Positions 1,966-56,855 are shown, counted from the stretch's first letter. The stretch is 64,000 bases of DNA from IMGVR_UViG_3300042934_000547:124001-188000, one strand, 5' to 3'. The notes: generated by a model from the sequence alone, not told the origin. A program made the numbers and translations.

Positions 1966-1980
1966 TTGTAAATCCTCCGT

Positions 1981-2036
1981 GCCATCTAATGAATGAGATT
2001 GTGATGGACTTTAGATTATTTTATTTTCTCATTCAT
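1981..2036 (-). promoter_or_regulatory. Predicted 5'-leader pseudoknot, copy A
   Basis: Sense strand: S1 ATGAATGAGA/TCTCATTCAT, S2 CCATC/GATGG, AAATAA after the S1 5' strand, GGAGG 3 nt after S2. Confidence 0.7.
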
Positions 2037-2039
2037 ATC

Positions 2040-2072
2040 TATAATATACATTTGAAAATCTTAACTTTTACA
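2040..2072 (-). promoter_or_regulatory. Bipartite early-type promoter TGTAAA-N18-TATATTATA
   Basis: + TATAATATA 2040-2048, TTTACA 2067-2072. Confidence 0.8.
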
Positions 2073-2111
2073 GTAAAAAATAATGAGTGAATTTTTCACT
2101 CATTATTACCT

Positions 2112-2723
2112 TCATTTTGAATTCATTGCCACCCTACTTTTAGCATCAGAGATCATTTCTTTATCAATTGGTATGTATTCGATTTGCTTAATATTCTTAT
2201 TTCTTTCAAAAATAATAATTGGTTGTTCTACCCAATCGGCATCATTGTCATCGATAGTCCCATCATAACCACGTTCTTTAAGTTCTGTAAAATATATACT
2301 TCTATTATAATCAGATGTAACTAAAGATGATATAAAAGATATATATGACTCATTACTTATCTTTTTAGTAGACCTATTCTCCCATTCTCTAAGAAATTTA
2401 TCTGAATCATTTCTATACTTTAATACCGAAATATCTTTAGCTACTTTATTAACATCTGCTTTTTCAACAGAACTGATAAATGCTTCGACACGCTCTTTAT
2501 GATTTGGTATTTTTATATCGTGTATAACCTTCAGTATAACTTTATATCCTCTGTTACCCCATTCGATTAAATATTTATCATTATCTAATGCAAGTTGTGA
2601 AACATACACGTGACGTTCGTTATTTACTTCGTTCTTATTTAAAGTAAGGCGTTGTAACAATGTTCCCTTTTTTAGTATTAGTGAATCGTTATTGAATTTA
2701 ATATTGTAGATCATATTCATCAC
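2112..2723 (-). CDS. Hypothetical protein, possible ADP-ribosyltransferase-like fold
   Basis: Pattern LQR...YVS...GYDG...EQPIIIF; fold guess is weak. Confidence 0.45.
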   Translation of the reverse strand: MMNMIYNIKFNNDSLILKKGTLLQRLTLNKNEVNNERHVYVSQLALDNDKYLIEWGNRGYKVILKVIHDIKIPNHKERVEAFISSVEKADVNKVAKDISVLKYRNDSDKFLREWENRSTKKISNESYISFISSLVTSDYNRSIYFTELKERGYDGTIDDNDADWVEQPIIIFERNKNIKQIEYIPIDKEMISDAKSRVAMNSK

Positions 2724-2777
2724 CTCATTTTTATATTAAACTACAGTTGAAAAAAATAAAGAGAGAATATTCTCTCT

Positions 2778-3176
2778 TTACCATGATGGGCATATACCTT
2801 TACATCCAATGGTTGTATTACCATCATATGTATATACTGCATCAGCTACACAGTACAATTTATCTGAATAACCAAATAAATGTGCATAAGCTTTAGCATA
2901 CATTGCTGATACAATATAGATATCGTATCCTTCAGGAAGTGGATCACAATTTACCACTTCTTTATCGAATACTGGGATACCACCTTGTTCAGTAACTCCA
3001 TTAAAAGTAGTGTTAATGGTAGCATTTAATTTTCCATCAGATGGTAGGCAGGCTACTACTTTGGGCTTTAAATCACGTACAATCATTTTCCTTCTAACGC
3101 CATCATATACTGCATTTTCTATAACAACTACTTTATGTGGCACTCCCACATAAATTTTACCTGTTATTTTGTTCAT
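2778..3176 (-). CDS. Hypothetical early protein
   Basis: GAGGTG RBS; own promoter and terminator (2758-2780). Confidence 0.7.
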   Translation of the reverse strand: MNKITGKIYVGVPHKVVVIENAVYDGVRRKMIVRDLKPKVVACLPSDGKLNATINTTFNGVTEQGGIPVFDKEVVNCDPLPEGYDIYIVSAMYAKAYAHLFGYSDKLYCVADAVYTYDGNTTIGCKGICPSW

Positions 3177-3190
3177 ATATAATCACCTCA

Positions 3191-3248
3191 CCTATTTGTA
3201 TTCTATACAAACGGATTTTAAATAGGATTTCGAATTATTTATCCGTTC
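3191..3248 (-). promoter_or_regulatory. Predicted 5'-leader pseudoknot, copy B
   Basis: S1 AACGGAT/ATCCGTT, S2 CCTAT(TT)/(AA)ATAGG, AAATAA loop, inserted hairpin TTGTA-tagaa-TACAA. Confidence 0.7.
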
Positions 3249-3253
3249 ATAGT

Positions 3254-3286
3254 TATAATATATATTTATAATTCCTAATTTTTACA
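3254..3286 (-). promoter_or_regulatory. Bipartite early-type promoter TGTAAA-N18-TATATTATA
   Basis: + TATAATATA 3254-3262, TTTACA 3281-3286. Confidence 0.8.
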
Positions 3287-3296
3287 AAGAAAAACT

Positions 3297-3318
3297 GGGT
3301 TAGGAATTAACCTAACCC
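3297..3318 (-). terminator. Intrinsic terminator after gyrA
   Basis: GGGTTAGG-aattaa-CCTAACCC followed by a T-run on the minus strand. Confidence 0.8.
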
Positions 3319-5672
3319 ATTATTGTGCAATCAAGTAATATAACACCCTTAGATGGAATCAATTTTGTTCCTTTAGAAATACTACTACCAATTTTTATAG
3401 TATCTATAGGTACGCCAATCTCACACTCAGTCGTTTTATAACCAAATGTCTGACACGGATTTTTATAGGCTAATACTTTGAATATTTCATCACCATCGCC
3501 TAACTTAATAAAATTAGCACCAACATTCGCTCTCTTACCATGTTTGATTGATTCAATGTCCAGTCTATTAACGTAACCTTTTCTAGTCACAATCAATACA
3601 CCTTGAGTATCTGCATCCTTAGATATACTTACTCCTTGCATACCAGTACTATTACCCATAGAACGAACACCTTTTGAATGACGTCTTTGTAATGGTATTT
3701 CAGTAGCATTCATAGCCAATCCTTTTTCCCTATCATATATAAATATGATGTCAGAATCTTTAATGAAATCTACATCAACCAGATAGTCATCATTCTCTAG
3801 ATTAATGGCATACATTCCAGCCTTGGAAACATTCATGAAGTCTTTTACATTAACCTTCTTAATATTACCATTATAGGTAAGAAGTAATATATAATTCTTA
3901 CGAACTTTCTTAGCCAGCTCATTTATTACTGAGTCTGTTGTAACATACATAACTTCCGATGTTAAATTCTTAGATATAAATCTTAAATCAACGCCAGTAG
4001 TATTTGGGTCCATCATAGGCATTGTACTAAGTGGAATACTGAATATACTTCCATTCTTACAGAATAATATAATACTATCTCTATTATCTATAAGGGTGGT
4101 GAACTTCGGTGCATCGTTATTAGCAAATGCTCCTAATCCTAGATTTTGATCTATTTTCTTTATAAAGTTATTTTTGGTAATAACCATTTGCATCATACCA
4201 CCACTAACTGCTACAGTTGCTGGATCAGGTATTACTTTACTTCTTCTAGGTCTACCATATTTAACTTTGAATCCATTGAGTTCATTTTTGATCTCGTCAA
4301 ACAGTAGTTTCTCATTATCTAACTTCATCTTTATATTTTCAATTTGAGATGATAGTTCGATTTGATCCACCTTATACCTATCTAATCTGGTCGGAGATAG
4401 ATATTTGAGAGGTGCATTAATTATAAATAATGCCTGATGTTCAGTTATCTTAATCTCTTTAATCAAGAACTCAACTAATTCTAAATCATCCTGCTTTGTT
4501 CCTTTACGAATCTTTTGGATTATATAATCAATATAACCAGATTCCATTACAGTAATAAACCCAGCTTTCTCATGTCGATTTGTTGATAACATTTGAAGTT
4601 TATTGGTATATAATCTATGCTTAGTCATTAATCTAAAGTCAATCCATTTCAATAAATATCCTTTATAAGAGTATCTATCTAATTTCAATCCATCAAGTAA
4701 CTGCATATTAACTGTGTATGTCATCTGTAAATCCGTATGTTTATATAGGATTTCTCTATTGTATTCTGGGTCAGCACCTTTTTTAAGTTCTAACCATAGA
4801 TCTACGTCACGCTCCCCAGATTGATCCTTATAATCTACAACTTGTAGCTTTTTAGCATCTATGAGACCAACAATTCTTTCTAAGATATTATTTAACGTTC
4901 TCATATCTGGAGTTGATTTAATGACCAAAAACGTTTTTTCTTTCTTGGTATCTCTCACAATTTCAATTTTTCCTCGAACACGAAAACTTCCGTGACCAGT
5001 ATTTGATATTGATTTGAAATTTGATTCTATTATATCAGAACCTAATAATTGGTCTGGAGTCAACACTATTGGTGCTGATGGATCATCTATTAATTTAAGT
5101 GTAGCATTTATAACCTCATTTAGATTATGGGCTGGTATATATACTTGTAATCCATATCCTATACCAAAGTGCCCATTAATCAATAATACCGGAGCTGCTG
5201 ACGCAAATGCTTCCGGTTCTTGATAATCCCTATTATACGTTTCAATATAATCTAAAACATTTTTATTGACATCGACATCTCGTACAAACATGTCGATAGC
5301 AAATTCAGATAACCGCATCTCTGTATATCTTGGAGCGGCTTCTTCATCTCCCTGTGAATTACCCCAGTTACCTTGACCAGTAAATAGTGGATAATTTATA
5401 TTGAAATCAGTCATGGAGTTAACTACCGCACTTTGTAATCCTTGATCACCATGTGGGTGGGATATCTCCATCGTTTTACCTATTACTGATTGAGTCTTAA
5501 TAAACTTCTCTCGTTTCATATGATAAATTAAACTACCAAGTAATCGTCGTACAGATACTTTTAATCCGTCTCTATAGTCTGGAGTAATCCTGTCAAAGTT
5601 AACAGATGTTGTATATATCTCTGCATCACGTTCATATGAATTTAAAAGATTTTGTTCAATTATTTTGTCCAT
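3312..5672 (-). CDS. gyrA: DNA gyrase / type IIA topoisomerase subunit A
   Basis: RDGLK, HPHGD, catalytic AAPRYTE, C-terminal pinwheel-type repeats (QRRHSKG). Confidence 0.95.
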   Translation of the reverse strand: MDKIIEQNLLNSYERDAEIYTTSVNFDRITPDYRDGLKVSVRRLLGSLIYHMKREKFIKTQSVIGKTMEISHPHGDQGLQSAVVNSMTDFNINYPLFTGQGNWGNSQGDEEAAPRYTEMRLSEFAIDMFVRDVDVNKNVLDYIETYNRDYQEPEAFASAAPVLLINGHFGIGYGLQVYIPAHNLNEVINATLKLIDDPSAPIVLTPDQLLGSDIIESNFKSISNTGHGSFRVRGKIEIVRDTKKEKTFLVIKSTPDMRTLNNILERIVGLIDAKKLQVVDYKDQSGERDVDLWLELKKGADPEYNREILYKHTDLQMTYTVNMQLLDGLKLDRYSYKGYLLKWIDFRLMTKHRLYTNKLQMLSTNRHEKAGFITVMESGYIDYIIQKIRKGTKQDDLELVEFLIKEIKITEHQALFIINAPLKYLSPTRLDRYKVDQIELSSQIENIKMKLDNEKLLFDEIKNELNGFKVKYGRPRRSKVIPDPATVAVSGGMMQMVITKNNFIKKIDQNLGLGAFANNDAPKFTTLIDNRDSIILFCKNGSIFSIPLSTMPMMDPNTTGVDLRFISKNLTSEVMYVTTDSVINELAKKVRKNYILLLTYNGNIKKVNVKDFMNVSKAGMYAINLENDDYLVDVDFIKDSDIIFIYDREKGLAMNATEIPLQRRHSKGVRSMGNSTGMQGVSISKDADTQGVLIVTRKGYVNRLDIESIKHGKRANVGANFIKLGDGDEIFKVLAYKNPCQTFGYKTTECEIGVPIDTIKIGSSISKGTKLIPSKGVILLDCTIMG

Positions 5673-5684
5673 TTGTTGTTCCTC

Positions 5685-8030: not shown

Positions 8031-8056
8031 TTGTGATGCTCCTTCCAATAAAAAAT

Positions 8057-8068
8057 CAATTAAGTGTT
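8057..8068 (-). promoter_or_regulatory. Late-type promoter AACA-N6-TG upstream of gyrBA
   Basis: Sense AACACTTAATTG. Confidence 0.55.
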
Positions 8069-8120
8069 CACAATAAAAACTAGATGTAAGTCGTTAAACT
8101 TACACCCAGTTTAATTTGTA

Positions 8121-8990: not shown

Positions 8991-9035
8991 TTTGTTATTT
9001 CCTCCTAAAATTTTATTTGGTTTTTATTTCACATT

Positions 9036-9044
9036 TATAATATA
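9036..9044 (-). promoter_or_regulatory. Early-type promoter TATATTATA
   Basis: Motif about 45 nt upstream of start 8990. Confidence 0.7.
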
Positions 9045-9059
9045 TATTTATAAAGTGTT

Positions 9060-9392: not shown

Positions 9393-9446
9393 TAAACAAG
9401 TCCTCCTAATTCGAATTAAATTATTTAATGGTTACATAATATATAA

Positions 9447-9881: not shown

Positions 9882-9901
9882 CTTGTTTCTCCCTTTCTTA
9901 T

Positions 9902-10453: not shown

Positions 10454-10477
10454 TTTTATTCTCCCATTTTTGTATTT

Positions 10478-28607: not shown

Positions 28608-30107
28608 CTATGCATTTACTTTATTATAGAATTCAATTAATGAACGTTTGTATTCTGGATCATATTTATCTCTACCCAAATTGATAAAGTTGTTTAAGTT
28701 AACTAATGTATTCTTTGTTGGTAGGTAGTTAACGTATAACAATCCATCATTTCTGTTTATAATCATAGCTCTTCTTGGATTATAAACTAATAATGCTGTT
28801 TGATAGAACTTGTCGTTGATTATCAACTTAACGTTTAATACGTCACCGTCAAAGTCTGCTTGTAGTGATGGCAATATATCAAGTGGAACACCCATTGTGA
28901 AATTATAGCATATTCCAATAACATGCATTTGAATCATACTACCATATTCCAATGTAGGATTTCTGTTTATCATTACTGGAATTCCAAATGGGTATGAGTT
29001 GATAATACTATTAATGATACTTATCAATTCATAATTCTCTTTAAGTCTTCCAACACTCCATATCATGTAAGCATCATTAATACTGATACTTCTTCTATGT
29101 GCAATTATATTTATAATTTTCTGTTGCAACAAATCACACAATGTATAATATGATAGAGTTATTTGGTCAACCTTAAGTGAAGCATCTGGTTTGATAACAT
29201 TTCTTGCTGTAAAGTTATATTTACCACCATATGCTCTCCTTATCAATCCAGTTTTACCTGACAAAATTTCTTCAATATCTGCATATACGTTCATGAACTC
29301 ATCTTGAAGTTTTTGAAGATATTCAGGTATTGATGTTTTATATAGAGTTAATTTATTCCTGTTTATTCTAGCTGTATACATAGCCATATTATTAAAATTA
29401 CCATTGATATCATAATATTCTAATTGTATACCAGAGGTTTTTAATAATCTTAATAATGTAGTATAAACAGGTATACAGCTTGTAAATATTAAGTCTCTAT
29501 TCTTTATGATTTCTTCATATGCATCCTGTTTACTTTGGGTATTAGCCATTTTCTTATAAAATGTAATTATTTCATCGAATCGATTGATGAATTCATATAT
29601 CCCGATTCTAAAGAATGGTTCTTTATCTGGATCTGGAGTCTCTACCGGAATCTCAATTCCATCTGAGTTAAAGTTTTCATCTAGATTCATCATATTATTA
29701 AATGCTTTTTGACCAATAAAACTTTGTATAGTCTTATACATTATTGGATGAATTACTTTATATCCATGCTGTATTACCAACCATCCCGTATAAGCAAAAT
29801 TATCGTCAACAAATTTAACTTTAGTTTTACATTTCGGGCACAGTATTCCTTCATTACTACGTGAACGTAAATTACCACATTCACATTTGTGTCGATCGCC
29901 ATTTGGACTAATATCATCAACACCTCTACCATATCGACTAGAGAATATTCCATCTGGGTCTTTTAATGCTTTTTTGATACCTTGGGCACCAGTAATTATA
30001 AATCCGTTGTCTGTTTCTAAGTCTCGTTTACATTCTTCTTCAAAATTGATTTTTACCAATCTAGATTGGTATTCAATTTCGTTACTATGTCCGTAATCAT
30101 TATACAT
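28608..30107 (-). CDS. Phage multisubunit RNA polymerase beta-prime, N-terminal catalytic fragment (probably non-virion RNAP)
   Basis: GIFS, Zn finger CECG..CPKC, GKTGLIR, NRNPTL, ADFDGD catalytic loop; TATATTATA at 30188-30196. Confidence 0.92.
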   Translation of the reverse strand: MYNDYGHSNEIEYQSRLVKINFEEECKRDLETDNGFIITGAQGIKKALKDPDGIFSSRYGRGVDDISPNGDRHKCECGNLRSRSNEGILCPKCKTKVKFVDDNFAYTGWLVIQHGYKVIHPIMYKTIQSFIGQKAFNNMMNLDENFNSDGIEIPVETPDPDKEPFFRIGIYEFINRFDEIITFYKKMANTQSKQDAYEEIIKNRDLIFTSCIPVYTTLLRLLKTSGIQLEYYDINGNFNNMAMYTARINRNKLTLYKTSIPEYLQKLQDEFMNVYADIEEILSGKTGLIRRAYGGKYNFTARNVIKPDASLKVDQITLSYYTLCDLLQQKIINIIAHRRSISINDAYMIWSVGRLKENYELISIINSIINSYPFGIPVMINRNPTLEYGSMIQMHVIGICYNFTMGVPLDILPSLQADFDGDVLNVKLIINDKFYQTALLVYNPRRAMIINRNDGLLYVNYLPTKNTLVNLNNFINLGRDKYDPEYKRSLIEFYNKVNA

Positions 30108-36858: not shown

Positions 36859-36878
36859 TTTAAACCTCCAAATTACAC

Positions 36879-36957
36879 CTCACTTCTTTATAGAAGAATA
36901 GTTACGTGAGTTATATATCCAACCAAGGATATATTTCGATTATATTATTTACTATTC
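36879..36957 (-). promoter_or_regulatory. Predicted 5'-leader pseudoknot, copy C
   Basis: S1 GAATAGT/ACTATTC, S2 CTCAC/GTGAG, AAATAA loop, two inserted hairpins. Confidence 0.75.
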
Positions 36958-36962
36958 AATTC

Positions 36963-36995
36963 TATAATATATATTTAAAAATACTAATTTTTACA
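36963..36995 (-). promoter_or_regulatory. Bipartite early-type promoter TGTAAA-N18-TATATTATA
   Basis: + TATAATATA 36963-36971, TTTACA 36990-36995. Confidence 0.8.
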
Positions 36996-43248: not shown

Positions 43249-43560
43249 TTATTTTATTTCCAACTCCGTTTTACAATATGGACATGTAAATATCTTTACG
43301 TTACCCATTTGTATCACTTTAGTTTCCCATCCATTTTTAAATATTATATGATTGCACATAGGGCATCGTTTAGATTTAGTTATAGATGTATACACAATAA
43401 GTCTCGCTTGTGATATATCTATTTTATTTAATTTCATTTGATTTAGTTCTTCTCCTAAACCTGTTACGTCTTCTTCTTCTTGTTCTATTTCTTTTTTCTT
43501 AAATATACCTGTAAAGAATTTCTTTACAAGATAGCTATAATATATTATATGGTCTAACAT
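43249..43560 (-). CDS. Early zinc-ribbon protein
   Basis: CPMC...CPYC; TATATTATA at 43587-43595. Confidence 0.7.
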   Translation of the reverse strand: MLDHIIYYSYLVKKFFTGIFKKKEIEQEEEDVTGLGEELNQMKLNKIDISQARLIVYTSITKSKRCPMCNHIIFKNGWETKVIQMGNVKIFTCPYCKTELEIK

Positions 43561-43658
43561 TTGTTGTCCTCCTTCAATATTATTACTATAATATATACTT
43601 ATTCACTATATTAAATAGTTTTTCAAATATTAATATTAAAATTTCTGGCATAGAAAAA

Positions 43659-46385: not shown

Positions 46386-47207
46386 TTAATGATTATGGTT
46401 ACATCCACACGATTGTTCACCAGTATGAACATGACCGCAATTACAGTCACGAGGTTCTCTAGTCTGAATTTGTGGATTTCTTATAATCGGACTACCTCCA
46501 ATAATGTAATTAATATATGTGGTTGTAAATAACAAAGTTGGATGATCATTACCACCCACAGTCAAAGTCATTTTTGTCATAAGATCATTTTCATCAAATT
46601 CATATTGGATATGTTTAGCCCCTGTAACAGATTCTTCCAGCACTTGACCTAAATCATTATCACGATATATCATGTGCGAAAGTTCATTACCATCTTCACC
46701 GATAACTATTTCACTCTTTTTGTTTGGTGAATTTGGATAAAACTCGCCTGTTACCTTAAACCCATCAATTTCAAATGAATATTTATCACCATCGATTTTA
46801 ATATCATATAACGTTTCAATCAAAGCTTCTTTATTTTCTGAATCTTGAGAATCTACCGAATGTTTAATCATTCTTATTGGTCTTTCTAATTCATTGAATT
46901 CAGTATCCATATAATTTAAATAAAGACTACCACTTCTAGTTGTTTCAGTAAATTTGCTTTTTGTAAGTTTGTTATTTTCGTCATAAAAATTTTCTGTTAT
47001 AGAACTCGGTTCAATTTTTCTAATTATTTTATCAGTATCTTGTAAATAACTAATTGTTTTTTGATTACCTACATAAATAGACGTTTCATCATTAATACGA
47101 ACAATTCTTCCGAGTTCATCAGTAAACATCAATGCGTGAAAGCATTCTCCTTCGTTTACAACCTTTCTTGTCACTAATATCTTTTTATTTGCTAAATTTT
47201 CATTCAT
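46386..47207 (-). CDS. Stand-alone YD-repeat-like early protein with His/Cys-rich tail
   Basis: TDELGRIVR, FYDENNKL, YEFDENDL; tail CNCGHVH...CGCNHNH; start moved to MNEN. Confidence 0.7.
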   Translation of the reverse strand: MNENLANKKILVTRKVVNEGECFHALMFTDELGRIVRINDETSIYVGNQKTISYLQDTDKIIRKIEPSSITENFYDENNKLTKSKFTETTRSGSLYLNYMDTEFNELERPIRMIKHSVDSQDSENKEALIETLYDIKIDGDKYSFEIDGFKVTGEFYPNSPNKKSEIVIGEDGNELSHMIYRDNDLGQVLEESVTGAKHIQYEFDENDLMTKMTLTVGGNDHPTLLFTTTYINYIIGGSPIIRNPQIQTREPRDCNCGHVHTGEQSCGCNHNH

Positions 47208-47225
47208 TTTATTACCCTTTCTTTG

Positions 47226-47273
47226 CCTCATTTTAGGATAAGATATGAGGTCTTACACATTATTTTCTTATCC
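47226..47273 (-). promoter_or_regulatory. Predicted 5'-leader pseudoknot, copy D
   Basis: S1 GGATAAGA/TCTTATCC, S2 CCTCAT/ATGAGG, AAATAA loop. Confidence 0.75.
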
Positions 47274-47278: not shown

Positions 47279-47311
47279 TATAATATACATTTGAAATAAG
47301 TTATATTTACA
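47279..47311 (-). promoter_or_regulatory. Bipartite early-type promoter TGTAAA-N18-TATATTATA
   Basis: + TATAATATA 47279-47287, TTTACA 47306-47311. Confidence 0.8.
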
Positions 47312-47340: not shown

Positions 47341-48030
47341 TTAATTAAAAATTCGGTTATAAAATGTAGTGGTGGTTTCTTCTGTATTATTATCTTTATG
47401 AGACACTTTCTTAGTTAATAATCCATTTTCGTCATATGTATATTTAGTTAACTTTCCATATTGACATGTTGAGTACCATTGATTTAATGGATTATCAATG
47501 TAAAAATTATGTATAACAACAGTATCTGTTTTTATTACCGTTGCTTTATATTCTTTCTTACGTGAAGAATTTGGGAAATAAGTAAAGTCCAATTTTCTGC
47601 CATTTATGATAAAAGTGTATGTATCATTAACTATAGTAGCATCCATGATTGTTTTTTCCTTTTTGGGATCTATATCACCAAAAATAGAATCAGTACTACC
47701 CTTAGTGATCTGTATTATTCTCCCTAACTCATCATATGAAAATATCCATATAAAAAGGTTTACACCATCTACGTCTTTTGTATACTCCCTACCTACTTCC
47801 AATTTACCGTTTTCATCATAGACATATTCGCCACACATTGTAGAACTTATTTTAATGATTTTGTCAGTATCATTGAAGTATTCGATATTTTCTGACGATC
47901 TCGTATACTTCTTTTCCCTCCTTACAATTCTACCGAGTCTATCGGTAAACATCAGTGAATGAAATTGTTCCTCACCATTATTCTTTCTCTTTGTTACCAA
48001 AATTACTTTCTTTTCCAAATTTTTGTTCAT
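47341..48030 (-). CDS. Stand-alone YD-repeat early protein (paralog of 46386..47207)
   Basis: FHSLMFTDRLGRIVR, YVYDENGKL, YDELGRI, YTYDENGLL; TATATTATA at 48087-48095. Confidence 0.75.
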   Translation of the reverse strand: MNKNLEKKVILVTKRKNNGEEQFHSLMFTDRLGRIVRREKKYTRSSENIEYFNDTDKIIKISSTMCGEYVYDENGKLEVGREYTKDVDGVNLFIWIFSYDELGRIIQITKGSTDSIFGDIDPKKEKTIMDATIVNDTYTFIINGRKLDFTYFPNSSRKKEYKATVIKTDTVVIHNFYIDNPLNQWYSTCQYGKLTKYTYDENGLLTKKVSHKDNNTEETTTTFYNRIFN

Positions 48031-48125
48031 CTTGTTTATTCTCCTTTTTAGGTTTTTAAATAAAAATCTATGTTTTTATTCATATCTATAATATATACTT
48101 GAAAAAATAACTAGAGAAAAAAGAA

Positions 48126-49201: not shown

Positions 49202-49274
49202 AATATATTACCTCCAATATTGGTTAATTAGAATAGTGTCATAAAAAAGAAAGAGAGGGAATCCCCTCCTTTCA

Positions 49275-50006: not shown

Positions 50007-50062
50007 TTTGTTTGTCTCCCTTTATATTTTATTTTTAATAGAATATGATTCTATTATTACTT

Positions 50063-50896: not shown

Positions 50897-51018
50897 TCGA
50901 ATTCCCCCTGTTATTAAGATTATTAATTCTATCCTATATTAGATTAGAATCAATTTCATAAATATAATATATACTTATAAGTGTTTTTATGGAATTGAAA
51001 TGATTAAGTGATTTAATT

Positions 51019-51417
51019 GGGTAGAAGAATTTTTTACCCTTCTCTTCTCCTTTCCCCCCTTAAACCCCCCTTTCCTCATCTCATCCCATTCACCCCTCTC
51101 CCTTATAATCTAGATTTAAATTATATTTATTTATTCTTTATTATTCTACCATCAATTCCATTATTCTTTATTTATCTTTAATTTTATTTATTTTTCTTCT
51201 TTCTCTTTATTTCTTTTCTTTATTCTTCCTGAGCTTCATCCATGAACCCCAATCTCGCTTCGCTCGTTCATTGGGTTCATGTCTCTACGAGACATTTTAG
51301 AGTCCAAAGCCCCCTATAGAAAACACCCGGTAGTAAAAAACTACCGAATGCGGGGGCTTGGACATAGTTACAACGCTCGACAATATTAGTATCAACTTTT
51401 GTGATTATCCTATTGTT
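51019..51417 (-). other. Non-coding structured locus: candidate replication origin / primer RNA
   Basis: Late-type motif 51406-51417, three GC-rich hairpins 51241-51363, about 190-nt purine tract, G-runs 51037-51102; no ORF. Confidence 0.55.
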
Positions 51418-51491
51418 ATTCGTAAATATTTTTTATAAATTTTATAGTCCTTCAACAATACTATAAATAATCCTTAGGAGGATATAAATAA

Positions 51492-52106
51492 ATGAATATA
51501 AAAAATAAGATTAGGTTATTCTTTCATAAATATAATTTAGATAATATATTTCTATTCTTTAATAATGATATAGATTTAGAAACTAAAACGACCATTCTGA
51601 GTGAGGAAGAAATATTAAGCAATCCTTTAGCTAGTTTATGTCAGCACCCATTTTATTCTATTATAGATATAAGCTTTGTTAATCAAAAAATAGTAATCAG
51701 TCTAGAGTCAATTATAACTCTAACCATATTACATGATTGTATTCAGAATATTTATAATAGAACGTCTGACTATATATTCACATTTGACATCACACGGTCT
51801 TATAAGATAGATAAGCTCGTAATCGATGTGGAAATACAATTCAGTACGACTCAGCAGGCTTATAAGTATTTACTCCTTTTACTGACTGACCTTAACCTAG
51901 AACTTATAGAAAGTGTAACTGTAGAACCTAAAAATATTTACGAGCATGATGATCTACTAAAATATTTCAATTCATATCAAGTAAATTATGAATCATATAT
52001 ACGATATTTGGATTCTAGTAAAACTAAACCTCAAATCAAATATATTATTGATGTACTTCATAATCATAATGATATGATTAAAAATATTCGTGATTTAATA
52101 CATTAG
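51492..52106 (+). CDS. Hypothetical protein
   Basis: GGAGG RBS; AACA-N6-TA at 51454-51465. Confidence 0.65.
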   Translation: MNIKNKIRLFFHKYNLDNIFLFFNNDIDLETKTTILSEEEILSNPLASLCQHPFYSIIDISFVNQKIVISLESIITLTILHDCIQNIYNRTSDYIFTFDITRSYKIDKLVIDVEIQFSTTQQAYKYLLLLLTDLNLELIESVTVEPKNIYEHDDLLKYFNSYQVNYESYIRYLDSSKTKPQIKYIIDVLHNHNDMIKNIRDLIH

Positions 52107-52118
52107 AAAAAAAAATAA

Positions 52119-52144
52119 ACCTCTAGGACTTTAATCCTAGAGGT
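52119..52144. terminator. Bidirectional terminator
   Basis: ACCTCTAGGA-ctttaa-TCCTAGAGGT. Confidence 0.8.
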
Positions 52145-52155
52145 ATCTTTATTTT

Positions 52156-53175
52156 CTATAAATCCGTATATATTTCTTCTAATAGATTTCCATCCATATC
52201 ATAAATTTTTCTATGCTTTTGATACTTATCAAATCTTACAGCTTCCTTATTCCATTTAGAATAAATAAACTCTTTAAAATGACATTCTATATCATTATAA
52301 ATGAAATCTCTTTCCATCATCAACTTAGAGAAGTTTCCATCATGGAAATATATACTTCCACCATCAGGCATGATGATATTTTTGTATTCATAGTCGTCGA
52401 TTTTTTCTGTTACCATTACTACATCATGTGGTAACGATTCTATAGTAACGGTGTGCCCCTGATTAGCAGCTACTATTGTGTAAGAACTAGGACGTCTTTG
52501 AAGTACCTCAAAATTATCAGTTGGTTTTAATAATATCTTATCCCTAATTTTACTATAATTGATCTTACCATAAACTGATGAAACTAAATCTCTGAATGAA
52601 GAGTAATTACCATCTGTTAAAATAGATGTACCGTTCTCAGTGATATTAGCTAATAAGCCACTCTTGCTATAGAAATATTTAAACTCTTTCTTAGCTGGTA
52701 TTATGACTATCATTCGTTCCACATCGTGACGATATGATGTGTATGAATATATCATATGAGATACAGTACGTTGGTCGTTTAAACCTAAAACGCTTTTAAC
52801 TAACAACAATTTGGTATCCATATTATTATAAATGCTTATTGTTGCCTTACCAGTAACTTCATCATATATTATAACAGTATTACCATATTGCACTCCCTTT
52901 ATTTCACGTTTAGTAACTTCGCCAGTAACAAGATTTGTCGTCCTATGTATTTGGTGTGGTAAATCTTCACGCAGACTCATGTATTCAACATTTAATTCAG
53001 TTGATGCTACAAAGTCAGTCTTTGTCTTTATTCCACCATAGTTATTATAAATCTCTTCCTTTAGAAGTTTACCCTGAGACTCTTCGGTCCCCTGTTCATA
53101 AAGATATGTATGTCGTAACTTTGATTGTCCATCTACTAATGCATATACTTTCCTTAATTCATTTTTTCCTTCCAT
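52156..53175 (-). CDS. Beta-rich, YD-repeat-like early protein
   Basis: IIYDEVTGK, YFYSKSGLL, IYDMDGNLL; AAGGAGG before MEGK; TATATTATA at 53214-53222. Confidence 0.6.
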   Translation of the reverse strand: MEGKNELRKVYALVDGQSKLRHTYLYEQGTEESQGKLLKEEIYNNYGGIKTKTDFVASTELNVEYMSLREDLPHQIHRTTNLVTGEVTKREIKGVQYGNTVIIYDEVTGKATISIYNNMDTKLLLVKSVLGLNDQRTVSHMIYSYTSYRHDVERMIVIIPAKKEFKYFYSKSGLLANITENGTSILTDGNYSSFRDLVSSVYGKINYSKIRDKILLKPTDNFEVLQRRPSSYTIVAANQGHTVTIESLPHDVVMVTEKIDDYEYKNIIMPDGGSIYFHDGNFSKLMMERDFIYNDIECHFKEFIYSKWNKEAVRFDKYQKHRKIYDMDGNLLEEIYTDL

Positions 53176-53243
53176 TTGTATCCTCCTTATATAACCTTTT
53201 AACTTATCGTTTATATAATATATACCCATATCAAATTTTGAAA

Positions 53244-53314
53244 ATAAAAGGGAGGAGTGAAATTAATCACTCCCAACAAGATGATTTTTATTACTTTACT
53301 TATAACCGAGACTT
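53244..53314 (-). ncRNA. Candidate small RNA (about 70 nt)
   Basis: AACT-N6-TA at 53314-53325, terminator 53254-53273, no minus-strand ORF. Confidence 0.3.
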
Positions 53315-53339
53315 ATGATATAGTTATATATATTTAGAA

Positions 53340-53510
53340 AAAAAAATATCGGGTAGGAAATCAATCCTACCCATTAGGCATGTGTAAAAGTAATTGATTT
53401 ATATGAATTAAAAAAGGAACGTTGTTGATGGAAAACAAATTTTAGGAGTTATACATAACAAATTGTCTTCACATGCCTATTTTATTTAACTGAAATTTTC
53501 TTATTCAATT
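53340..53510 (-). ncRNA. Candidate small RNA (about 170 nt)
   Basis: AACA-N6-TA at 53510-53521; 10-bp long-range stem TAGGCATGTG/CACATGCCTA; terminator 53351-53372 plus T-run. Confidence 0.45.
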
Positions 53511-53530
53511 ACCTTATTGTTATTACCCTA

Positions 53531-53644
53531 TTAATTATTATTACGTTGAATTGGTATAATATTATGAGTAAATTTGAATAGTAATTGTTCAGACTCTTCC
53601 ACCATCAATGCCTCTAGTATGAATTTCTTTTCATTAATTGTCAT
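53531..53644 (-). CDS. Small protein (37 aa; not in ORF track)
   Basis: MTINEKKFILEALMVEESEQLLFKFTHNIIPIQRNNN; starts just downstream of the preceding stop; AAGGA RBS. Confidence 0.5.
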   Translation of the reverse strand: MTINEKKFILEALMVEESEQLLFKFTHNIIPIQRNNN

Positions 53645-53647
53645 AGT

Positions 53648-54496
53648 TTATTTTTCCTTTATTATGTATTCTAAATTATTCAGTTTAAGTTTATTAGCAT
53701 AACTAAATAATTCAGTGGCAAATATATCATCACATTGTTTATGCCAATTTATTTTTTCTTCATCTGTCATTTCCAACAGCGTACAAAATTCATCATATCT
53801 ATCTATATATAGATATACCTTAGATTTATTATCCCATACATCCAATGTTTTATCTAATCTCACTTTACGAACAATAAATCGTGCCAGTGTTTTTAATACA
53901 TTGATATATAATTCTTTATTGAAACGTCCTGATTCTTCAAATAACTGAAATACATTTACAGTAAATTTATTGTATCTAATTCTATCAAGACTAATATATC
54001 CACTGTATATATATTTAAATAAATCGTATCGCTCATTTATCTGTATTGGATAACTAAAATTATTCATATTAATATTGTGAGTACATTTCGATACCCAATC
54101 ATTAAATTTCTTTGAATTAATATTAGTATGTAATATCTCAGTTACCGTATAACTAGGTTGTATATTGATGAAATTACTTAATGGTATTTCATCTACACAA
54201 TTCACAGGAACATAGGAATTTGCTCGGTTATTATTATAACAGACGTAATACTTAAGAGCCATAGGTTCATATTTAATGAGTAATCGTTCAATAGCCTCCT
54301 GTATCTCACAGCTTTGAACTATATCCCTAGAACCAAATTCTTTTTTGATTTTTCCAGAGATAGTATAAACTAATGAAACGTCCTCTAGATATTTTTTAGG
54401 ATTGCAAGCCACCAAAACTGAATTTAAAATAATATTGAGTTTTTCTTTATTAAATGGTTCTACCGCCCCGTTCCGTTTAATAATTAAAGTAATCAT
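53648..54496 (-). CDS. ATP-cone protein with degenerate RNR-like C-terminus
   Basis: IIKRNGAVEPFNKEKL...EIQEAIERLL; AACA-N6-TA at 54533-54544. Confidence 0.75.
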   Translation of the reverse strand: MITLIIKRNGAVEPFNKEKLNIILNSVLVACNPKKYLEDVSLVYTISGKIKKEFGSRDIVQSCEIQEAIERLLIKYEPMALKYYVCYNNNRANSYVPVNCVDEIPLSNFINIQPSYTVTEILHTNINSKKFNDWVSKCTHNINMNNFSYPIQINERYDLFKYIYSGYISLDRIRYNKFTVNVFQLFEESGRFNKELYINVLKTLARFIVRKVRLDKTLDVWDNKSKVYLYIDRYDEFCTLLEMTDEEKINWHKQCDDIFATELFSYANKLKLNNLEYIIKEK

Positions 54497-54654
54497 ATTG
54501 TAAGTCTCCCTTCTAATGCCTATTAATTAAATTATCTTTATGTTTGTTTTTTCGTTAAATATTCTACAGTTACATAAATCAATATCTCCGTGAAATTTAT
54601 TATTTTATACCATTGCAACATTATAATAGTTGTGGAAGACTAAAGGAGAATATG

Positions 54655-55464
54655 ATGATGGAAAATAAAATAGATGTACAAGGATATAAGTATTATTCAA
54701 TAGAAGATAATATTATTAGAATCTCTAAAGATAAAAATGTTATTAATGATAAGTGGACTAAACTGAAAATGGATGCATTAATGGCTTTTCATATAATATC
54801 GAATGATGATGGAGCCAAATATATTATGGTTGCTATGTACAATAATGGTGACTATAAAAATCCTGTTCTGATATTTGTTTCAAATTTTATAAATGAATGG
54901 GACGCAAATATTGGTAATAGAATACTAGGGAAAACATTCAACAGGTATACTGGAATTGATGAAAATTTATTTAAGGTTATAAAAATAGAATATTCCGAAT
55001 ATGTTGCTATATATAAGGAAGATTCATTTAAAAATATTTATGACCAACTTATTAATAAAGATAAGTTTAATGAAGTCCTTAAAGCATTTAATTCTGCTTT
55101 TATAGAAATGGGTAATCTTAATATATCTCTACCTGATAATCTTTATGATTATATGAAACACGGTGCATTTGATTATGACTACGATAATGAATTAGGCATT
55201 GAGCAACTTGAATTTGACCTTGAAATAGATAATGAGAGACTAATCAACCAATTAGACTTAGAAACATTTCTCGGTCATAAATTAATTCAACCTGTTATAG
55301 TCAAATATAATCGAATTATAGTTTTAGAAGATATCAAAAAAGACTATGGATTATTCCGTGACGCCACTGATACATTATATCTAGTTACGTTTATTCGTGG
55401 AGATATAATAGATGATGAAAACCTAGATTTAATCGAGTGGAATAAGAGCTTTGGAGTGAGGTAA
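54655..55464 (+). CDS. Hypothetical protein
   Basis: AAGGAG RBS; AACA-N6-TA at 54617-54628. Confidence 0.65.
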   Translation: MMENKIDVQGYKYYSIEDNIIRISKDKNVINDKWTKLKMDALMAFHIISNDDGAKYIMVAMYNNGDYKNPVLIFVSNFINEWDANIGNRILGKTFNRYTGIDENLFKVIKIEYSEYVAIYKEDSFKNIYDQLINKDKFNEVLKAFNSAFIEMGNLNISLPDNLYDYMKHGAFDYDYDNELGIEQLEFDLEIDNERLINQLDLETFLGHKLIQPVIVKYNRIIVLEDIKKDYGLFRDATDTLYLVTFIRGDIIDDENLDLIEWNKSFGVR

Positions 55465-55535
55465 TAAAATATATTATAAATATATATTATAACAATGAAT
55501 TAAACAAATTTAAAATTTTAGGAGGAACAACAAAG

Positions 55536-56255
55536 ATGGATATGGATAATACATTCATGAACCCAAACCAAGTGAATCAAAAGGAAATAAAGGATTACGA
55601 AGCAGAATTCGATACTCCAATTACATTAAGTGAGCCGATGAGATTTTATATCGAGACCACTACACGTTTAGGTATGGAGATATTAAAGAAGTATACTCCA
55701 ATTTTCGGCGACTTAATCGGTACGTTTATTACGGTTAATACCAAAGGCGATCTTGAAGTATCATTACAGTTTGAGAAAAAAGGTGCTGGCAATGTTGTAG
55801 ACTTATTCAACAACAGTGACTTCAACCAAAGAATTACAGCGTTCAATACGCTTAACACAACAAACAGAATCTTCGATTTAGATGATACTGTTAAAGGAAC
55901 TTTCCAAAGATTCTTAATCAAAGCTAATCCAATGCAGAAAATTGATTGGAATCAATATATCAGACAAATAACAATCAACAACAACACTATGAGTGGAAAG
56001 CACACAATTCTTGAATTGGCTCACATTTCACTTGATAGATTGCTGCCTGAATTAATATTTGTTGGAGAAGATGCTAAGAAAAAACGCACTACTCAGATTA
56101 AGACTATTATAACTGGTTCTGTAAATCCAGCTTCACCATTATCAAAAAATTGGTTCGTGAAGATAGATATGCTGGATCAAGCTACTGTTGATTTCGTATC
56201 TAAAGAAGCAGGAATTGTTACAAGCACTTACGGCTTGGATATGATAACACTCTAA
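55536..56255 (+). CDS. Early hypothetical protein
   Basis: TATATTATA at 55483-55491; strong RBS. Confidence 0.7.
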   Translation: MDMDNTFMNPNQVNQKEIKDYEAEFDTPITLSEPMRFYIETTTRLGMEILKKYTPIFGDLIGTFITVNTKGDLEVSLQFEKKGAGNVVDLFNNSDFNQRITAFNTLNTTNRIFDLDDTVKGTFQRFLIKANPMQKIDWNQYIRQITINNNTMSGKHTILELAHISLDRLLPELIFVGEDAKKKRTTQIKTIITGSVNPASPLSKNWFVKIDMLDQATVDFVSKEAGIVTSTYGLDMITL

Positions 56256-56313
56256 TATAGCAGAGGGTATACATTATGTATACCCTTTAATTTTTCTCTA
56301 TGGAGGTACACTA

Positions 56314-56643
56314 ATGGCTTTCGAAGACAAACTCGAATATGACATAGAACAAGAATTAGGTGTATTTGATGAAAAAGGAAATACATCACTTGAATTAAGA
56401 GTTGTAAGCTGGAATAAGAAGCCTGCTAAACTTGAATTAAGAAAATGGGTAACCAACAGCGATGGTCAAAATCCAAATAAAGGATTCTCATTCTTAACTG
56501 ATGAAGGTCCGCATCGTCTTGCTGAACTTTTAGTTGAAAATAATTTTGGAGATACAAAAACTCTAAAAGCTCTTTTAATTGATAGGGATGATTACGATGA
56601 ATCTGAATCAGATTATGACTATTTGGATGAAGAAGAAGAATAA
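56314..56643 (+). CDS. PC4/YdbC-family ssDNA-binding protein
   Basis: LELRVVSWN..PAKLELRKW...KGFSF; acidic tail. Confidence 0.8.
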   Translation: MAFEDKLEYDIEQELGVFDEKGNTSLELRVVSWNKKPAKLELRKWVTNSDGQNPNKGFSFLTDEGPHRLAELLVENNFGDTKTLKALLIDRDDYDESESDYDYLDEEEE

Positions 56644-56649
56644 CAATTA

Positions 56650-56679
56650 ATGGTGGAACCTGTAATCGGGTTCCATCAT
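56650..56679 (+). terminator. Intrinsic terminator
   Basis: ATGGTGGAACC...GGTTCCATCAT followed by a T-run. Confidence 0.8.
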
Positions 56680-56719
56680 TTTTTTTTGTATTATGACAAT
56701 ATTCGCATCAAGATAAGAA

Positions 56720-56752
56720 TGTAAAAATTAACTTTTTTGAATATATATTATA
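56720..56752 (+). promoter_or_regulatory. Bipartite early-type promoter TGTAAA-N18-TATATTATA
   Basis: TGTAAA 56720-56725, TATATTATA 56744-56752. Confidence 0.8.
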
Positions 56753-56757
56753 GATAT

Positions 56758-56839
56758 GAATAGTAAATAATAAATAGTAGTATATTCTTAGTTGAATATA
56801 TAAACTCACATAACTATTCTTCTTTCATAAGAAGTGAGT
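56758..56839 (+). promoter_or_regulatory. Predicted 5'-leader pseudoknot, copy E
   Basis: S1 GAATAGT 56758-64 / ACTATTC 56813-19; S2 ACTCAC 56804-09 / GTGAGT 56834-39; AAATAA loop. Confidence 0.75.
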
Positions 56840-56855
56840 AATAGAGGAGAATGAA

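What the first reader, a model, noticed from the sequence alone, without database searches (positions are those of the whole stretch)
1966..56855. Family of 5'-terminal pseudoknot leaders tied to a special early promoter class (candidate new phage RNA system)
Seen: five unrelated genes (starts 1965, 3176, 36858, 47207, 56856) have leaders with the same order a-AAATAA-...-b-(short linker)-a'-(loop or hairpin)-b'-RBS, an H-type pseudoknot. Stem sequences differ but pairing is kept. S1: ATGAATGAGA/TCTCATTCAT, AACGGAT/ATCCGTT, GAATAGT/ACTATTC (x2), GGATAAGA/TCTTATCC. S2: CCATC/GATGG, CCTAT/ATAGG, CTCAC/GTGAG (x2), CCTCAT/ATGAGG. In every copy a G of S1 lies exactly 6 nt after TATATTATA, near the expected +1, and AAATAA follows S1 directly. 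All 5 of 5 TGTAAA-N18 promoters with visible leaders have it; the nine or so other TATATTATA promoters do not. Inference: the mRNA 5' end is knotted. It could act as a structural cap against RppH/RNase J-type 5' decay (analogous to viral xrRNAs), as a translation enhancer, or as a target for a phage regulator of immediate-early genes, several of which encode membrane proteins.
Basis: partly seen in the sequence, partly recalled or inferred. Interest (0 to 1): 0.92.

Follow-up and report, generated by a model that had tools for sequence, protein, structure and literature searches.

The report
Knotted 5' leaders on jumbo-phage early mRNAs
An uncultivated giant phage puts the same two-helix, knot-like RNA fold at the very first base of at least seven early messages, probably to shield their 5' ends from decay while leaving the ribosome site free; this is a new variant of a known trick, with no experimental evidence yet.

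Summary
The window comes from a 232-kb uncultivated AR9-like jumbo phage. TATATTATA is the AR9-type early (virion RNA polymerase) promoter, whose mapped start in AR9 is the G six nt downstream. That G is the first base of helix S1 in all five leaders.

- **S1 is solid.** It passes shuffle tests, shows compensatory changes among paralogs, and relatives show an excess of 5'-terminal helices.
- **S2 (the pseudoknot helix) is moderately supported.** It is not significant in an unconstrained test. It is significant when position is restricted, in a cognate versus non-cognate test, and in one out-of-sample copy just outside the window. A second, compact pseudoknot family in other phages shows compensatory changes in its S2.
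- **TGTAAA-N18 is not pseudoknot-specific.** It is a clade-wide upstream promoter element, and most such promoters in relatives have short plain leaders.
- **AAATAA tracks the end of S1a,** not the distance from +1, and is specific to this phage family.
- **The leaders are lineage-specific.** The closest relative expresses the orthologous gene from a 13-nt leader.
- **No match in Rfam, and none in the literature searches run here.**

The most likely role is a cis-acting 5' stabiliser that leaves the ribosome-binding site open. That function is inferred. Nested folding energies and short connecting loops leave co-formation of S1 and S2 unproven.

The parts
1..32 (-). TGTAAA-N18-TATATTAT early promoter of leader L0, cut by the window edge. 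The leader itself lies outside the window (L115:15679-15782) and has the same S1/AAAUAA/S2 layout.
2040..2072 (-). Leader 1 promoter: TGTAAA 2072-2067, TATATTATA 2048-2040. Predicted +1 is G at 2034.
   Evidence: AR9 consensus
1966..2034 (-). Leader 1 (69 nt): S1a 2034-2027, AAATAA 2026-2021, S2a CCATC 2007-2003, S1b 1998-1991, S2b GATGG 1986-1982, SD GGAGG 1978-1974, ATG 1965.
3254..3286 (-). Leader 2 promoter: TGTAAA 3286-3281, TATATTATA 3262-3254. Predicted +1 is G at 3248.
3177..3248 (-). Leader 2 (72 nt): S1a 3248-3241 (G1.U closing pair), AAATAA 3240-3235, S2a CCTATTT 3226-3220, S1b 3216-3209, small hairpin 3210-3198, S2b AAATAGG 3197-3191, SD GAGGTG 3189-3184, ATG 3176.
36963..36995 (-). 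Leader 3 promoter: TGTAAA 36995-36990, TATATTATA 36971-36963. Predicted +1 is G at 36957.
36859..36957 (-). Leader 3 (99 nt): S1a 36957-36951, AAATAA 36950-36945, hairpin H1 36934-36913, S2a CTCAC 36910-36906, S1b 36902-36896, hairpin H2 36895-36884, S2b GTGAG 36883-36879, SD GGAGG 36869-36865, ATG 36858.
47279..47311 (-). Leader 4 promoter: TGTAAA 47311-47306, TATATTATA 47287-47279. Predicted +1 is G at 47273.
47208..47273 (-). Leader 4 (66 nt): S1a 47273-47266, AAATAA 47265-47260, S2a CCTCAT 47250-47245, S1b 47243-47236, S2b ATGAGG 47231-47226, SD AAAGGG 47220-47215, ATG 47207.
56720..56752 (+). Leader 5 promoter: TGTAAA 56720-56725, TATATTATA 56744-56752. Predicted +1 is G at 56758.
56758..56855 (+). 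Leader 5 (98 nt), paralog of leader 3: S1a 56758-56764, AAATAA 56765-56770, H1 56780-56801, S2a CTCAC 56805-56809, S1b 56813-56819, H2 56820-56833, S2b GTGAG 56834-56838, SD GAGGAG 56844-56849, ATG 56856.
52..73 (-). Terminator-like hairpin immediately upstream of the L0 promoter. Similar hairpins lie at 2079-2107 before the L1 promoter and 3296-3319 before the L2 promoter. Each unit reads terminator, promoter, leader, gene.

Best explanation
These are members of a lineage-specific, paralogous family of structured 5' leaders. At least seven copies were found in the parts of the 232-kb genome that were read. The window holds five of them, plus the promoter of a sixth. They sit on early transcripts made by the virion RNA polymerase of an uncultivated AR9-like jumbo phage.

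Proposed anatomy:
- Transcription starts at the G six nt after TATATTATA. This is inferred from AR9 mapping.
- That G is the first nucleotide of a 7-11-bp helix S1, so the triphosphate 5' end is base-paired with no overhang.
- A conserved AAAUAA follows S1a directly.
- A C-rich stretch at the 3' end of the S1 loop pairs with a G-rich stretch 1-9 nt upstream of the Shine-Dalgarno sequence (S2).
- This gives a non-nested (H-type) arrangement that folds the whole leader. The SD and AUG stay free in most copies; in leader 1 the nested fold also pairs the 3' half of the SD.

Most likely role: a cis-acting 5' stabiliser. It would deny RppH-type pyrophosphohydrolases and 5'-end-dependent RNases (RNase J1, 5'-tethered RNase Y/E) a single-stranded entry point while keeping translation initiation open.

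Status of each step:
- Shown: the sequence architecture, its non-random nature, and compensatory change in S1, H1 and H2.
- Moderately supported: S2 pairing.
- Inferred: the transcription start, co-formation of S1 and S2, and the protective function.
For: Phage identity and promoter:
- A split RNA polymerase beta' gene and gyrase lie in the window. Distant relatives include AR9, PBS1 and phiR1-37.
- The promoter matches AR9 early promoters with mapped starts.

S1:
- Per-leader shuffle P = 0.002-0.056.
- In the L3/L5/L6 subfamily, 5 of 7 S1 pairs, 5 of 8 H1 pairs and 2 of 4 H2 pairs change on both sides. 98.6% of cells are paired against 33-50% when the partner is slid.
- Across related phages, 28 of 111 leaders have a 5'-terminal helix with shuffle P <= 0.05 against 5.6 expected. 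The excess decays to expectation by +16.

S2:
- Cognate S2a/S2b scores (13-18) beat all 44 derangements of the five distinct types; the non-cognate mean is 9.6.
- Position-restricted shuffles give P = 0.003-0.095. The out-of-sample copy L0 gives P = 0.003.
- An independent compact pseudoknot family in other phages shows compensatory S2 change, TGATAGT/ACTATCA against TGTAAGT/ACTTACA.

AAATAA:
- It sits right after S1a, from +8 to +13 depending on the copy, so it follows the RNA helix and not the promoter distance.
- It occurs in only 5 of 95 unselected TGTAAA promoters of relatives.

Background:
- B. subtilis RppH needs at least 2 unpaired 5' nucleotides, and 5' stem-loops stabilise mRNA (PMC3997798).
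- A knotted RNA can mechanically stop RNase J1 in vitro (PMC5760640).
Against: - No experimental transcription start, probing or decay data exist for this phage. Helix boundaries cannot fix +1 to the nucleotide: Watson-Crick helices often begin at +2 with a G1.U pair, and DNA-level repeats often run to -1 or -2.
- S2 is not significant without positional restriction. The restriction was chosen after seeing L1-L5.
- Outside the two families, loop-to-tail pairing is not enriched: 2 of 18 leaders, Fisher P = 0.08.
- Pseudoknot-free folding gives weak z-scores (-2.4 to +0.1). S1 appears in the minimum-energy fold of only L0 and L4.
- The link from S1b to S2b is only 4 nt over an 8-bp S1 in L1 and L4. 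It is 0 nt in a look-alike leader from another contig (L394). Full co-formation may be sterically strained there.
- In leader 1 the nested fold also pairs the 3' half of the SD with the S1 loop.
- The closest relative (gyrA 47% identical) expresses the ortholog of the leader-2 gene (53% identical) from a 13-nt leader. The fold is therefore not needed for these genes as such.
- Two AR9 early leaders with mapped starts show no helix at +1.
Confidence: 0.5

Rival explanations
1. Only the 5'-terminal hairpin S1 matters, as an ordinary 5' stem-loop stabiliser. The S2 complementarity is incidental, or is an independent small helix next to the ribosome site, and no pseudoknot forms.
For: - 5'-terminal helices are common in relatives without any loop-to-tail pairing.
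- S2 is not significant in unconstrained tests.
- A CCUAUAUC/GAUGUAGG hairpin abuts the SD in another phage without S1 (L397).
- CUCAC/GUGAG occurs as a plain hairpin overlapping the SD in L228.
- The S1b-S2b links are short.
Against: - Cognate S2 beats non-cognate S2 in all 44 derangements.
- The out-of-sample copy L0 gives P = 0.003.
- S2a always lies 1-5 nt before S1b, inside the S1 loop, in all seven copies.
- The type-B family shows compensatory S2 changes.
Confidence: 0.22
2. The fold is an operator for a shared phage-encoded (or host) RNA-binding factor. That factor would repress or time translation of a set of early genes, as gp32 does on the T4 gene 32 leader pseudoknot.
For: - AAAUAA is strictly conserved while all stems vary.
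- The S2 arms are invariant in the L3/L5/L6 subfamily while 12 of the 19 other pairs changed.
- Seven unrelated genes share one design.
- There is precedent in PMC3014915.
Against: - No candidate binding protein was identified.
- The downstream genes are unrelated orphans, so autoregulation is unlikely.
- The SD is left free in most copies.
Confidence: 0.15
3. S1 and S2 are alternative, mutually exclusive states of a conformational switch (ligand-, temperature- or ribosome-driven) that tunes access to the ribosome site.
For: - S1 and S2 have similar energies, and the nested minimum-energy fold picks one or the other.
- The S1b-S2b links are very short in L1, L4 and L394.
- Leader 1's loop can also pair with part of the SD.
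Against: - The two helices share no nucleotides.
- No conserved ligand-pocket-like core exists beyond AAAUAA.
- No Rfam riboswitch match even at E <= 1.
- The SD is not sequestered in most copies.
Confidence: 0.08
4. The pattern is an artefact of AT-rich composition, recent duplication of one cassette, or a DNA-level (promoter or operator) element, and not an RNA structure.
For: - Leaders 3 and 5 are near-duplicates.
- Paralogs share pieces: the S1a of L0 and L1, and the S2 of L0 and L2.
- AT-rich sequence yields many short helices.
Against: - Stem sequences differ between copies while pairing is kept.
- The motif count is far above shuffles.
- The spacing of the repeats varies from 20 to 50 nt and their sequences differ, which does not fit a common DNA-binding site.
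- AAATAA tracks the helix end, not the distance from +1.
Confidence: 0.04

Closest known systems
5'-terminal stem-loop mRNA stabilisers (E. coli ompA and papA leaders, B. subtilis aprE leader; the phage T7 gene 10 leader hairpin, from my own knowledge)
   Same: The helix starts at or within about 1 nt of +1, in front of a strong ribosome site. The expected effect is to block RppH and 5'-end-dependent RNases (PMC3997798).
   Different: Here a second helix ties the hairpin loop to the segment just upstream of the SD. A conserved AAAUAA follows S1a. The design is repeated on at least seven unrelated early genes of one phage. No stability data exist.
T4/T2/RB69 gene 32 mRNA leader pseudoknot (translational operator)
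   Same: A phage mRNA leader with an H-type pseudoknot 5' of the ribosome site. Gene 32 mRNA is also unusually stable (PMC3014915).
   Different: The gene 32 knot serves one gene and is bound by its own product, which then spreads over an unstructured A/U-rich region. Here the knot abuts the SD, serves many unrelated genes, and no binding protein is known. There is no sequence similarity.
Flavivirus exoribonuclease-resistant RNAs (xrRNAs)
   Same: A knotted fold that acts as a mechanical block to 5'-3' exonucleases, shown in vitro to stop bacterial RNase J1 (PMC5760640).
   Different: xrRNAs are internal elements built on a three-way junction, with a ring around the 5' end and conserved tertiary contacts. 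The phage leaders are two-helix knots at the primary 5' end. No Rfam family matches.
AR9/PBS1 early (virion RNA polymerase) promoters and their 5' UTRs
   Same: The same promoter consensus and start position. A subset of AR9 promoters carries an upstream CCGTATTAAAA element at the same N18 distance as TGTAAA. The AR9 authors predicted an unexplained motif in early 5' UTRs (PMC5312081).
   Different: The proteins are under 30% identical. The two AR9 early leaders inspected (g087, g104) lack a +1 helix. The AR9 UTR motif figure could not be read.
H-type pseudoknot riboswitches next to the SD (preQ1-I/II, SAM-II, fluoride, guanidine-III)
   Same: A small pseudoknot whose 3' arm lies at or next to the ribosome site.
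   Different: Those sequester the SD and have conserved ligand pockets. Here the SD is mostly free, only AAAUAA is conserved, and there is no Rfam match at E <= 1.

Membership tests
AR9-type early promoter (virion multisubunit RNA polymerase) | Consensus AAATATATATTAT-(6N)-G+1 | tested here: met
   All five sites read (A/G)(A/T)ATNTATATTATA-N5-G. Consensus from PMC5312081.
AR9-type early promoter (virion multisubunit RNA polymerase) | The genome encodes split multisubunit RNA polymerase subunits | tested here: met
   RNA_pol_Rpb1_2 domain in the 28608-30107 product. tblastn hits to the beta' pieces of phiR1-37, AR9 and PBS1.
AR9-type early promoter (virion multisubunit RNA polymerase) | Transcription start mapped at the G; early, protein-synthesis-independent expression | not testable with these tools
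   The phage is an uncultivated metagenomic contig.
H-type RNA pseudoknot | Arm order a-b-a'-b', with the 5' arm of helix 2 inside the loop of helix 1 | tested here: met
   Seven leaders of the focal genome.
H-type RNA pseudoknot | Both helices supported by compensatory change or above-chance complementarity | tested here: inconclusive
   S1 is clearly supported. S2 is invariant within the L3 subfamily and varies with pairing kept between subfamilies. Cognate beats non-cognate at P <= 1/45. The unconstrained test is not significant.
H-type RNA pseudoknot | Loops long enough for both helices to form at once; co-formation shown | not testable with these tools
   The S1b-S2b link is 4 nt in L1 and L4 and 12-33 nt elsewhere. 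No pseudoknot-capable folding, 3D modelling or probing was available. Nested folds are uninformative.
5'-terminal stem-loop mRNA stabiliser | Helix beginning within about 1 nt of the 5' end | tested here: met
   S1 starts at the predicted +1 in every copy. This depends on the inferred start.
5'-terminal stem-loop mRNA stabiliser | Longer half-life that depends on the helix | not testable with these tools
   Needs reporter or in vitro decay assays.
Any Rfam 15 family (xrRNA, preQ1, SAM-II and other pseudoknot families, if curated in that release) | Covariance-model match | tested here: not met
   No hit at gathering score in the window. No hit at E <= 1 in six focal loci covering L1-L7.
T4 gene 32-type autoregulatory operator | The knot sits in the leader of the gene whose product binds it | tested here: not met
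   The same design precedes at least seven unrelated orphan genes with no nucleic-acid-binding domain detected in the five window genes. Binding itself was not tested.

The most novel reading that the evidence does not exclude
The leaders are a phage counterpart of exoribonuclease-resistant RNAs placed at the primary 5' end. This would be a protein-free knotted cap that mechanically blocks RppH and RNase J-type 5' decay. It could let virion-polymerase early mRNAs survive while host mRNAs are degraded. Different jumbo-phage lineages would have evolved such knots independently (type A here, compact type B elsewhere).
Probability: 0.2. Interest if true: 0.85.

Novelty: new variant of a known kind. 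Interest (0 to 1): 0.55.

Why it matters
If the fold forms and protects, it would be the first described pseudoknot-type 5' stabiliser on bacterial-virus mRNAs. It would offer a simple explanation of how early transcripts of polymerase-injecting jumbo phages last in Firmicute hosts that have a 5'-3' exonuclease. It would also give a compact, portable, roughly 65-100-nt leader for stabilising mRNAs in Gram-positive expression systems. Independently of the knot, the survey suggests that about a quarter of the longer early leaders sampled in this uncultivated jumbo-phage clade begin with a helix at the predicted +1. That supports carrying the AR9 start-site rule over to distant relatives.

Tried and rejected
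- **Rfam:** scans at gathering score and at E <= 1 gave nothing.
- **Close relatives:** megablast to known phages gave no match.
- **Orthologous leaders for covariation:** the nearest gyrA among 5.8 billion proteins is only 47% identical. Its syntenic locus has a 13-nt leader for the leader-2 gene ortholog and no promoter before the leader-1 gene ortholog. Ortholog-based covariation was therefore impossible.
- **MAFFT alignment of the seven leaders:** not structurally consistent.
- **Covariance model:** a model built from L3+L5 recovers only L3, L5 and L6. It does not unite the short and long forms.
- **TGTAAA as a knot-specific promoter mark:** rejected.
- **AAATAA as a general promoter-proximal element:** rejected, 5 of 95.
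- **My first positional statistic** (37 leaders against about 8) was biased, because helices cannot be attributed further upstream at +1. replace it.
- **Clade-wide enrichment of loop-to-tail pairing:** not found.
- **AR9 leaders g087 and g104:** no +1 helix.
- **A phage Nudix or RNase in the window** that could motivate self/non-self mRNA discrimination: none found among the 58 ORFs scanned. RNase H and dUTPase are present.
- **Thermodynamic support from nested folding:** weak.

Full report
**What the window is.** The window has about 30% G+C. It encodes gyrase A and B, a DnaB-like helicase and a fragment of RNA polymerase beta'. That fragment's best matches, all under 30% identity, are the split polymerase subunits of jumbo phages phiR1-37, AR9, PBS1 and relatives. 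There is no nucleotide-level match among known phages. The source is IMG/VR contig IMGVR_UViG_3300042934_000547 (231,975 bp), and the window is contig 124001-188000. The nearest gyrA among 5.8 billion proteins is only 47% identical. The phage therefore has no close sequenced relative.

**The promoter and the start site.** TATATTATA occurs 24 times in the window against 10.5 expected. Fifteen of these sites are intergenic and correctly oriented. They match the early promoter of AR9, AAATATATATTAT-(6N)-G+1. Its starts were mapped by dRNA-seq and primer extension and assigned to the virion RNA polymerase. The same 6-nt rule holds for phiKZ and phiR1-37 (PMC5312081). In all five leaders the G six nt after TATATTATA is the first base of S1. 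For this phage it remains an inference.

**The observation.**
- The composite TATATTATA-N5-G-N5-9-AAATAA occurs five times against 0.03 expected.
- TGTAAA-N16-20-TATATTAT occurs six times, always with N18, against 0.09 expected.
- The sixth site is at window 1-32 on the minus strand. Its leader (L0) lies just outside the window and has the same layout: S1 GAAUGAGAAUA/UAUUCUUAUUU, AAAUAA, S2 CCUAUUAC/GUGAUAGG ending 1 nt before the SD.
- A strict-motif scan of IMG/VR found another copy elsewhere in the genome (L6). It also found a degenerate one (L7) whose S1 carries a mismatch and which has no S2. A later promoter scan found a TGTAAA promoter with a short plain leader (L268).
- The genome parts that were read therefore hold at least seven knot-type leaders. 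The rule that every TGTAAA promoter has one holds in the window but not genome-wide.

**Is S1 real?**
- With the first four bases fixed and the rest shuffled, an S1 as long as observed arises with P = 0.002-0.056 per leader.
- A covariance model built from L3+L5 finds L6 (E about 5e-4) and nothing else.
- On that model-fitted alignment, 5 of 7 S1 pairs, 5 of 8 H1 pairs and 2 of 4 H2 pairs change on both sides. 98.6% of cells are paired, against 33-50% when partners are slid. With only three sequences and a fitted alignment this is supportive, not conclusive.
- Promoter-pattern scans brought in many related ~200-270-kb contigs. Among 111 non-redundant leaders of at least 35 nt, 28 have a helix starting at +1 with shuffle P <= 0.05 (5.6 expected, binomial 9e-13). 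The counts are 15 at +6, 11 at +11 and 5 of 82 at +16, the last being the expectation.
- My earlier contrast (37 against about 8) was biased and is withdrawn.
- Helix ends cannot fix +1 to the base. Watson-Crick helices most often begin at +2 with a G1.U pair, and DNA repeats often extend to -1 or -2.

**Is S2, and hence the pseudoknot, real?**

Against:
- By length alone S2 is unremarkable, P = 0.02-0.79.
- Across the clade, loop-to-tail pairing is not enriched.
- Pseudoknot-free folding gives weak z-scores and chooses S1 in only two leaders.
- The S1b-S2b link is only 4 nt in L1 and L4.
- A look-alike leader from another contig (L394) has S1 GAA(U)ACAUAGU/ACUAUGUUC, UAAAAUAA and S2 CUCGGG/CCUGAG, but a link of 0 nt.

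For:
- In all seven copies S2a ends 1-5 nt before S1b and S2b ends 1-9 nt before the SD.
- With those windows, P = 0.003-0.095. The copy not used to define them (L0) gives P = 0.003.
- The five distinct S2 types pair better with their own partner (13-18) than with others (mean 9.6), exceeding all 44 derangements.
- A second family in other phages (L177, L196a/b, L332, L277a/b, L232) has a textbook compact layout: S1a of 9-10 nt, 1 nt, S2a of 7 nt, 2-3 nt, S1b, about 15 A-rich nt, S2b, then the SD. Its S2 changes in a compensatory way, TGATAGT/ACTATCA against TGTAAGT/ACTTACA.

I rate S2 pairing as likely. Simultaneous formation with S1 is unproven.

**TGTAAA and AAATAA.** TGTAAA(A)-N18 precedes early promoters in many related contigs, and most of those leaders are short and plain. 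AR9 has CCGTATTAAAA at the same distance in a subset of its promoters. TGTAAA is therefore an upstream promoter element, not a mark of the knot. AAATAA is found in only 5 of 95 unselected TGTAAA promoters. It is present in all eight focal leaders, always directly after S1a, at +8 to +13 depending on S1 length. It follows the RNA helix, which argues for a role in the RNA, either a tertiary contact or a factor binding site.

**Evolution.**
- The closest relative (L170) keeps the gene order gyrB, gyrA, ortholog of the leader-2 gene (53% identity). That gene has an early promoter and a 13-nt leader. The leader-1 gene ortholog is co-transcribed with no promoter of its own.
- In the window, L0, L1 and L2 are each preceded by a terminator-like hairpin.
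- Paralogs share pieces in a mosaic way: the S1a of L0 and L1, the S2 of L0 and L2, and the S2 of L3, L5 and L6.
- The leaders look like modular terminator-promoter-leader cassettes that spread and diverged within this lineage. This is an inference.

**Mechanism.**
- Established knowledge: B. subtilis RppH needs at least two unpaired 5' nucleotides, and 5' stem-loops stabilise mRNAs in both E. coli and B. subtilis (PMC3997798). A knotted RNA can mechanically stop RNase J1 (PMC5760640).
- The relatives' gyrA hits are labelled as Firmicute MAGs. From my own knowledge, Firmicutes generally carry RNase J and RNase Y.
- A leader whose first base is paired, whose A/U-rich interior is tied up, and whose SD and AUG remain free fits a cis-acting stabiliser that still allows translation.
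- The strict conservation of AAAUAA, and of the S2 arms within one subfamily, keeps a shared trans-acting factor in play. The precedent is the T4 gene 32 leader pseudoknot (PMC3014915).
- A switch between S1 and S2 is a minor possibility.

**Novelty.** No Rfam family matches. Five full-text literature searches returned no paper on 5'-terminal pseudoknots of phage mRNAs. The AR9 paper mentions an unexplained early-UTR motif whose figure I could not read. I class this as a new variant of a known kind, the 5'-terminal structural stabiliser or leader pseudoknot. It is supported by sequence statistics and paralog comparison only.

Noticed in passing
window 48031-48081 (-): The early promoter at 48087-48095 lacks TGTAAA-N18 but gives a 51-nt leader with a plain 8-bp A/U hairpin from +2 (AAUAAAAA/UUUUUAUU; shuffle P = 0.012). 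This fits the general 5'-terminal-helix trend without any knot.
   Followed up: partly
window 52-73, 2079-2107, 2755-2782, 3296-3319 (-): Terminator-like hairpins sit immediately upstream of the TGTAAA promoters, giving insulated terminator-promoter-leader-gene units. These are reminiscent of the promoter-early stem-loop cassettes of T4-type phages (comparison from my own knowledge).
   Followed up: partly
L177, L196, L332 (IMGVR_UViG_3300012274_000057); L277 (3300013368_000005); L232 (3300030294_000005): A second, compact 5'-terminal pseudoknot leader family (type B) in other jumbo phages. It has an A-rich ~15-nt loop 3, S2b abutting the SD, and compensatory S2 changes.
   Followed up: partly
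L189, L193, L241, L206, L214 (early leaders of an orthologous gene whose product starts MAKF/MTKF): In several related phages +1..+9 (GAUAAAG...) pairs with the spacer between the SD and AUG (...CUUUAUC-AUG). The 5' end closes the whole leader around the ribosome site, and the arms vary between phages while pairing is kept.
   Followed up: no
L228 (IMGVR_UViG_3300033463_000006) and L397:3916-4040: The same arm sequences as the focal S2 (CUCAC/GUGAG and CCUAU.../...AUAGG) occur in other phages as simple hairpins overlapping or abutting the SD, without enclosing S1b. S2 may be an older module than the knot.
   Followed up: no
L266:10727-10850 (AR9 g104, the uracil-DNA glycosylase inhibitor gene): The mapped 121-nt early leader contains a strong SD followed by AUG-UAA, a start-stop mini-ORF, about 90 nt upstream of the real start.
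   Followed up: no
AR9 Table S2: Nine AR9 early promoters carry (C)CGTAT(T/C) about 18 nt upstream of TATATTAT, the same distance as TGTAAA here. This suggests a conserved upstream contact of the virion polymerase.
   Followed up: no
window 55470-55491 (+) and 43536-43595 (both strands): Overlapping or tandem TATATTATA motifs: two copies 13 nt apart before the 55536 gene, and a palindromic pair plus a third copy near 43540-43595.
   Followed up: no
window 47341-48030 (-): The 229-aa product has weak RHS-repeat matches (E = 5.5e-7, no single stretch significant). Its gene is driven by the p48095 promoter, directly upstream of the leader-4 unit.
   Followed up: no
window, one of the 58 ORFs scanned: A dUTPase and a dCTP-deaminase-like protein are encoded in the window. 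This may mean the genome is not uracil-substituted as AR9 and PBS1 are, even though the early promoter is shared.
   Followed up: no
window 46386-47207 (-): The leader-4 gene product ends in a Cys/His-rich tail (CNCGHVHTGEQSCGCNHNH), possibly a metal-binding motif. It has no Pfam or PHROG match.
   Followed up: no
L170:9059-10171, L171:17823-19067: The nearest relatives encode a tubulin-like protein (weak PF00091) a few kb from gyrA. This hints at a PhuZ-type cytoskeleton in this clade.
   Followed up: no
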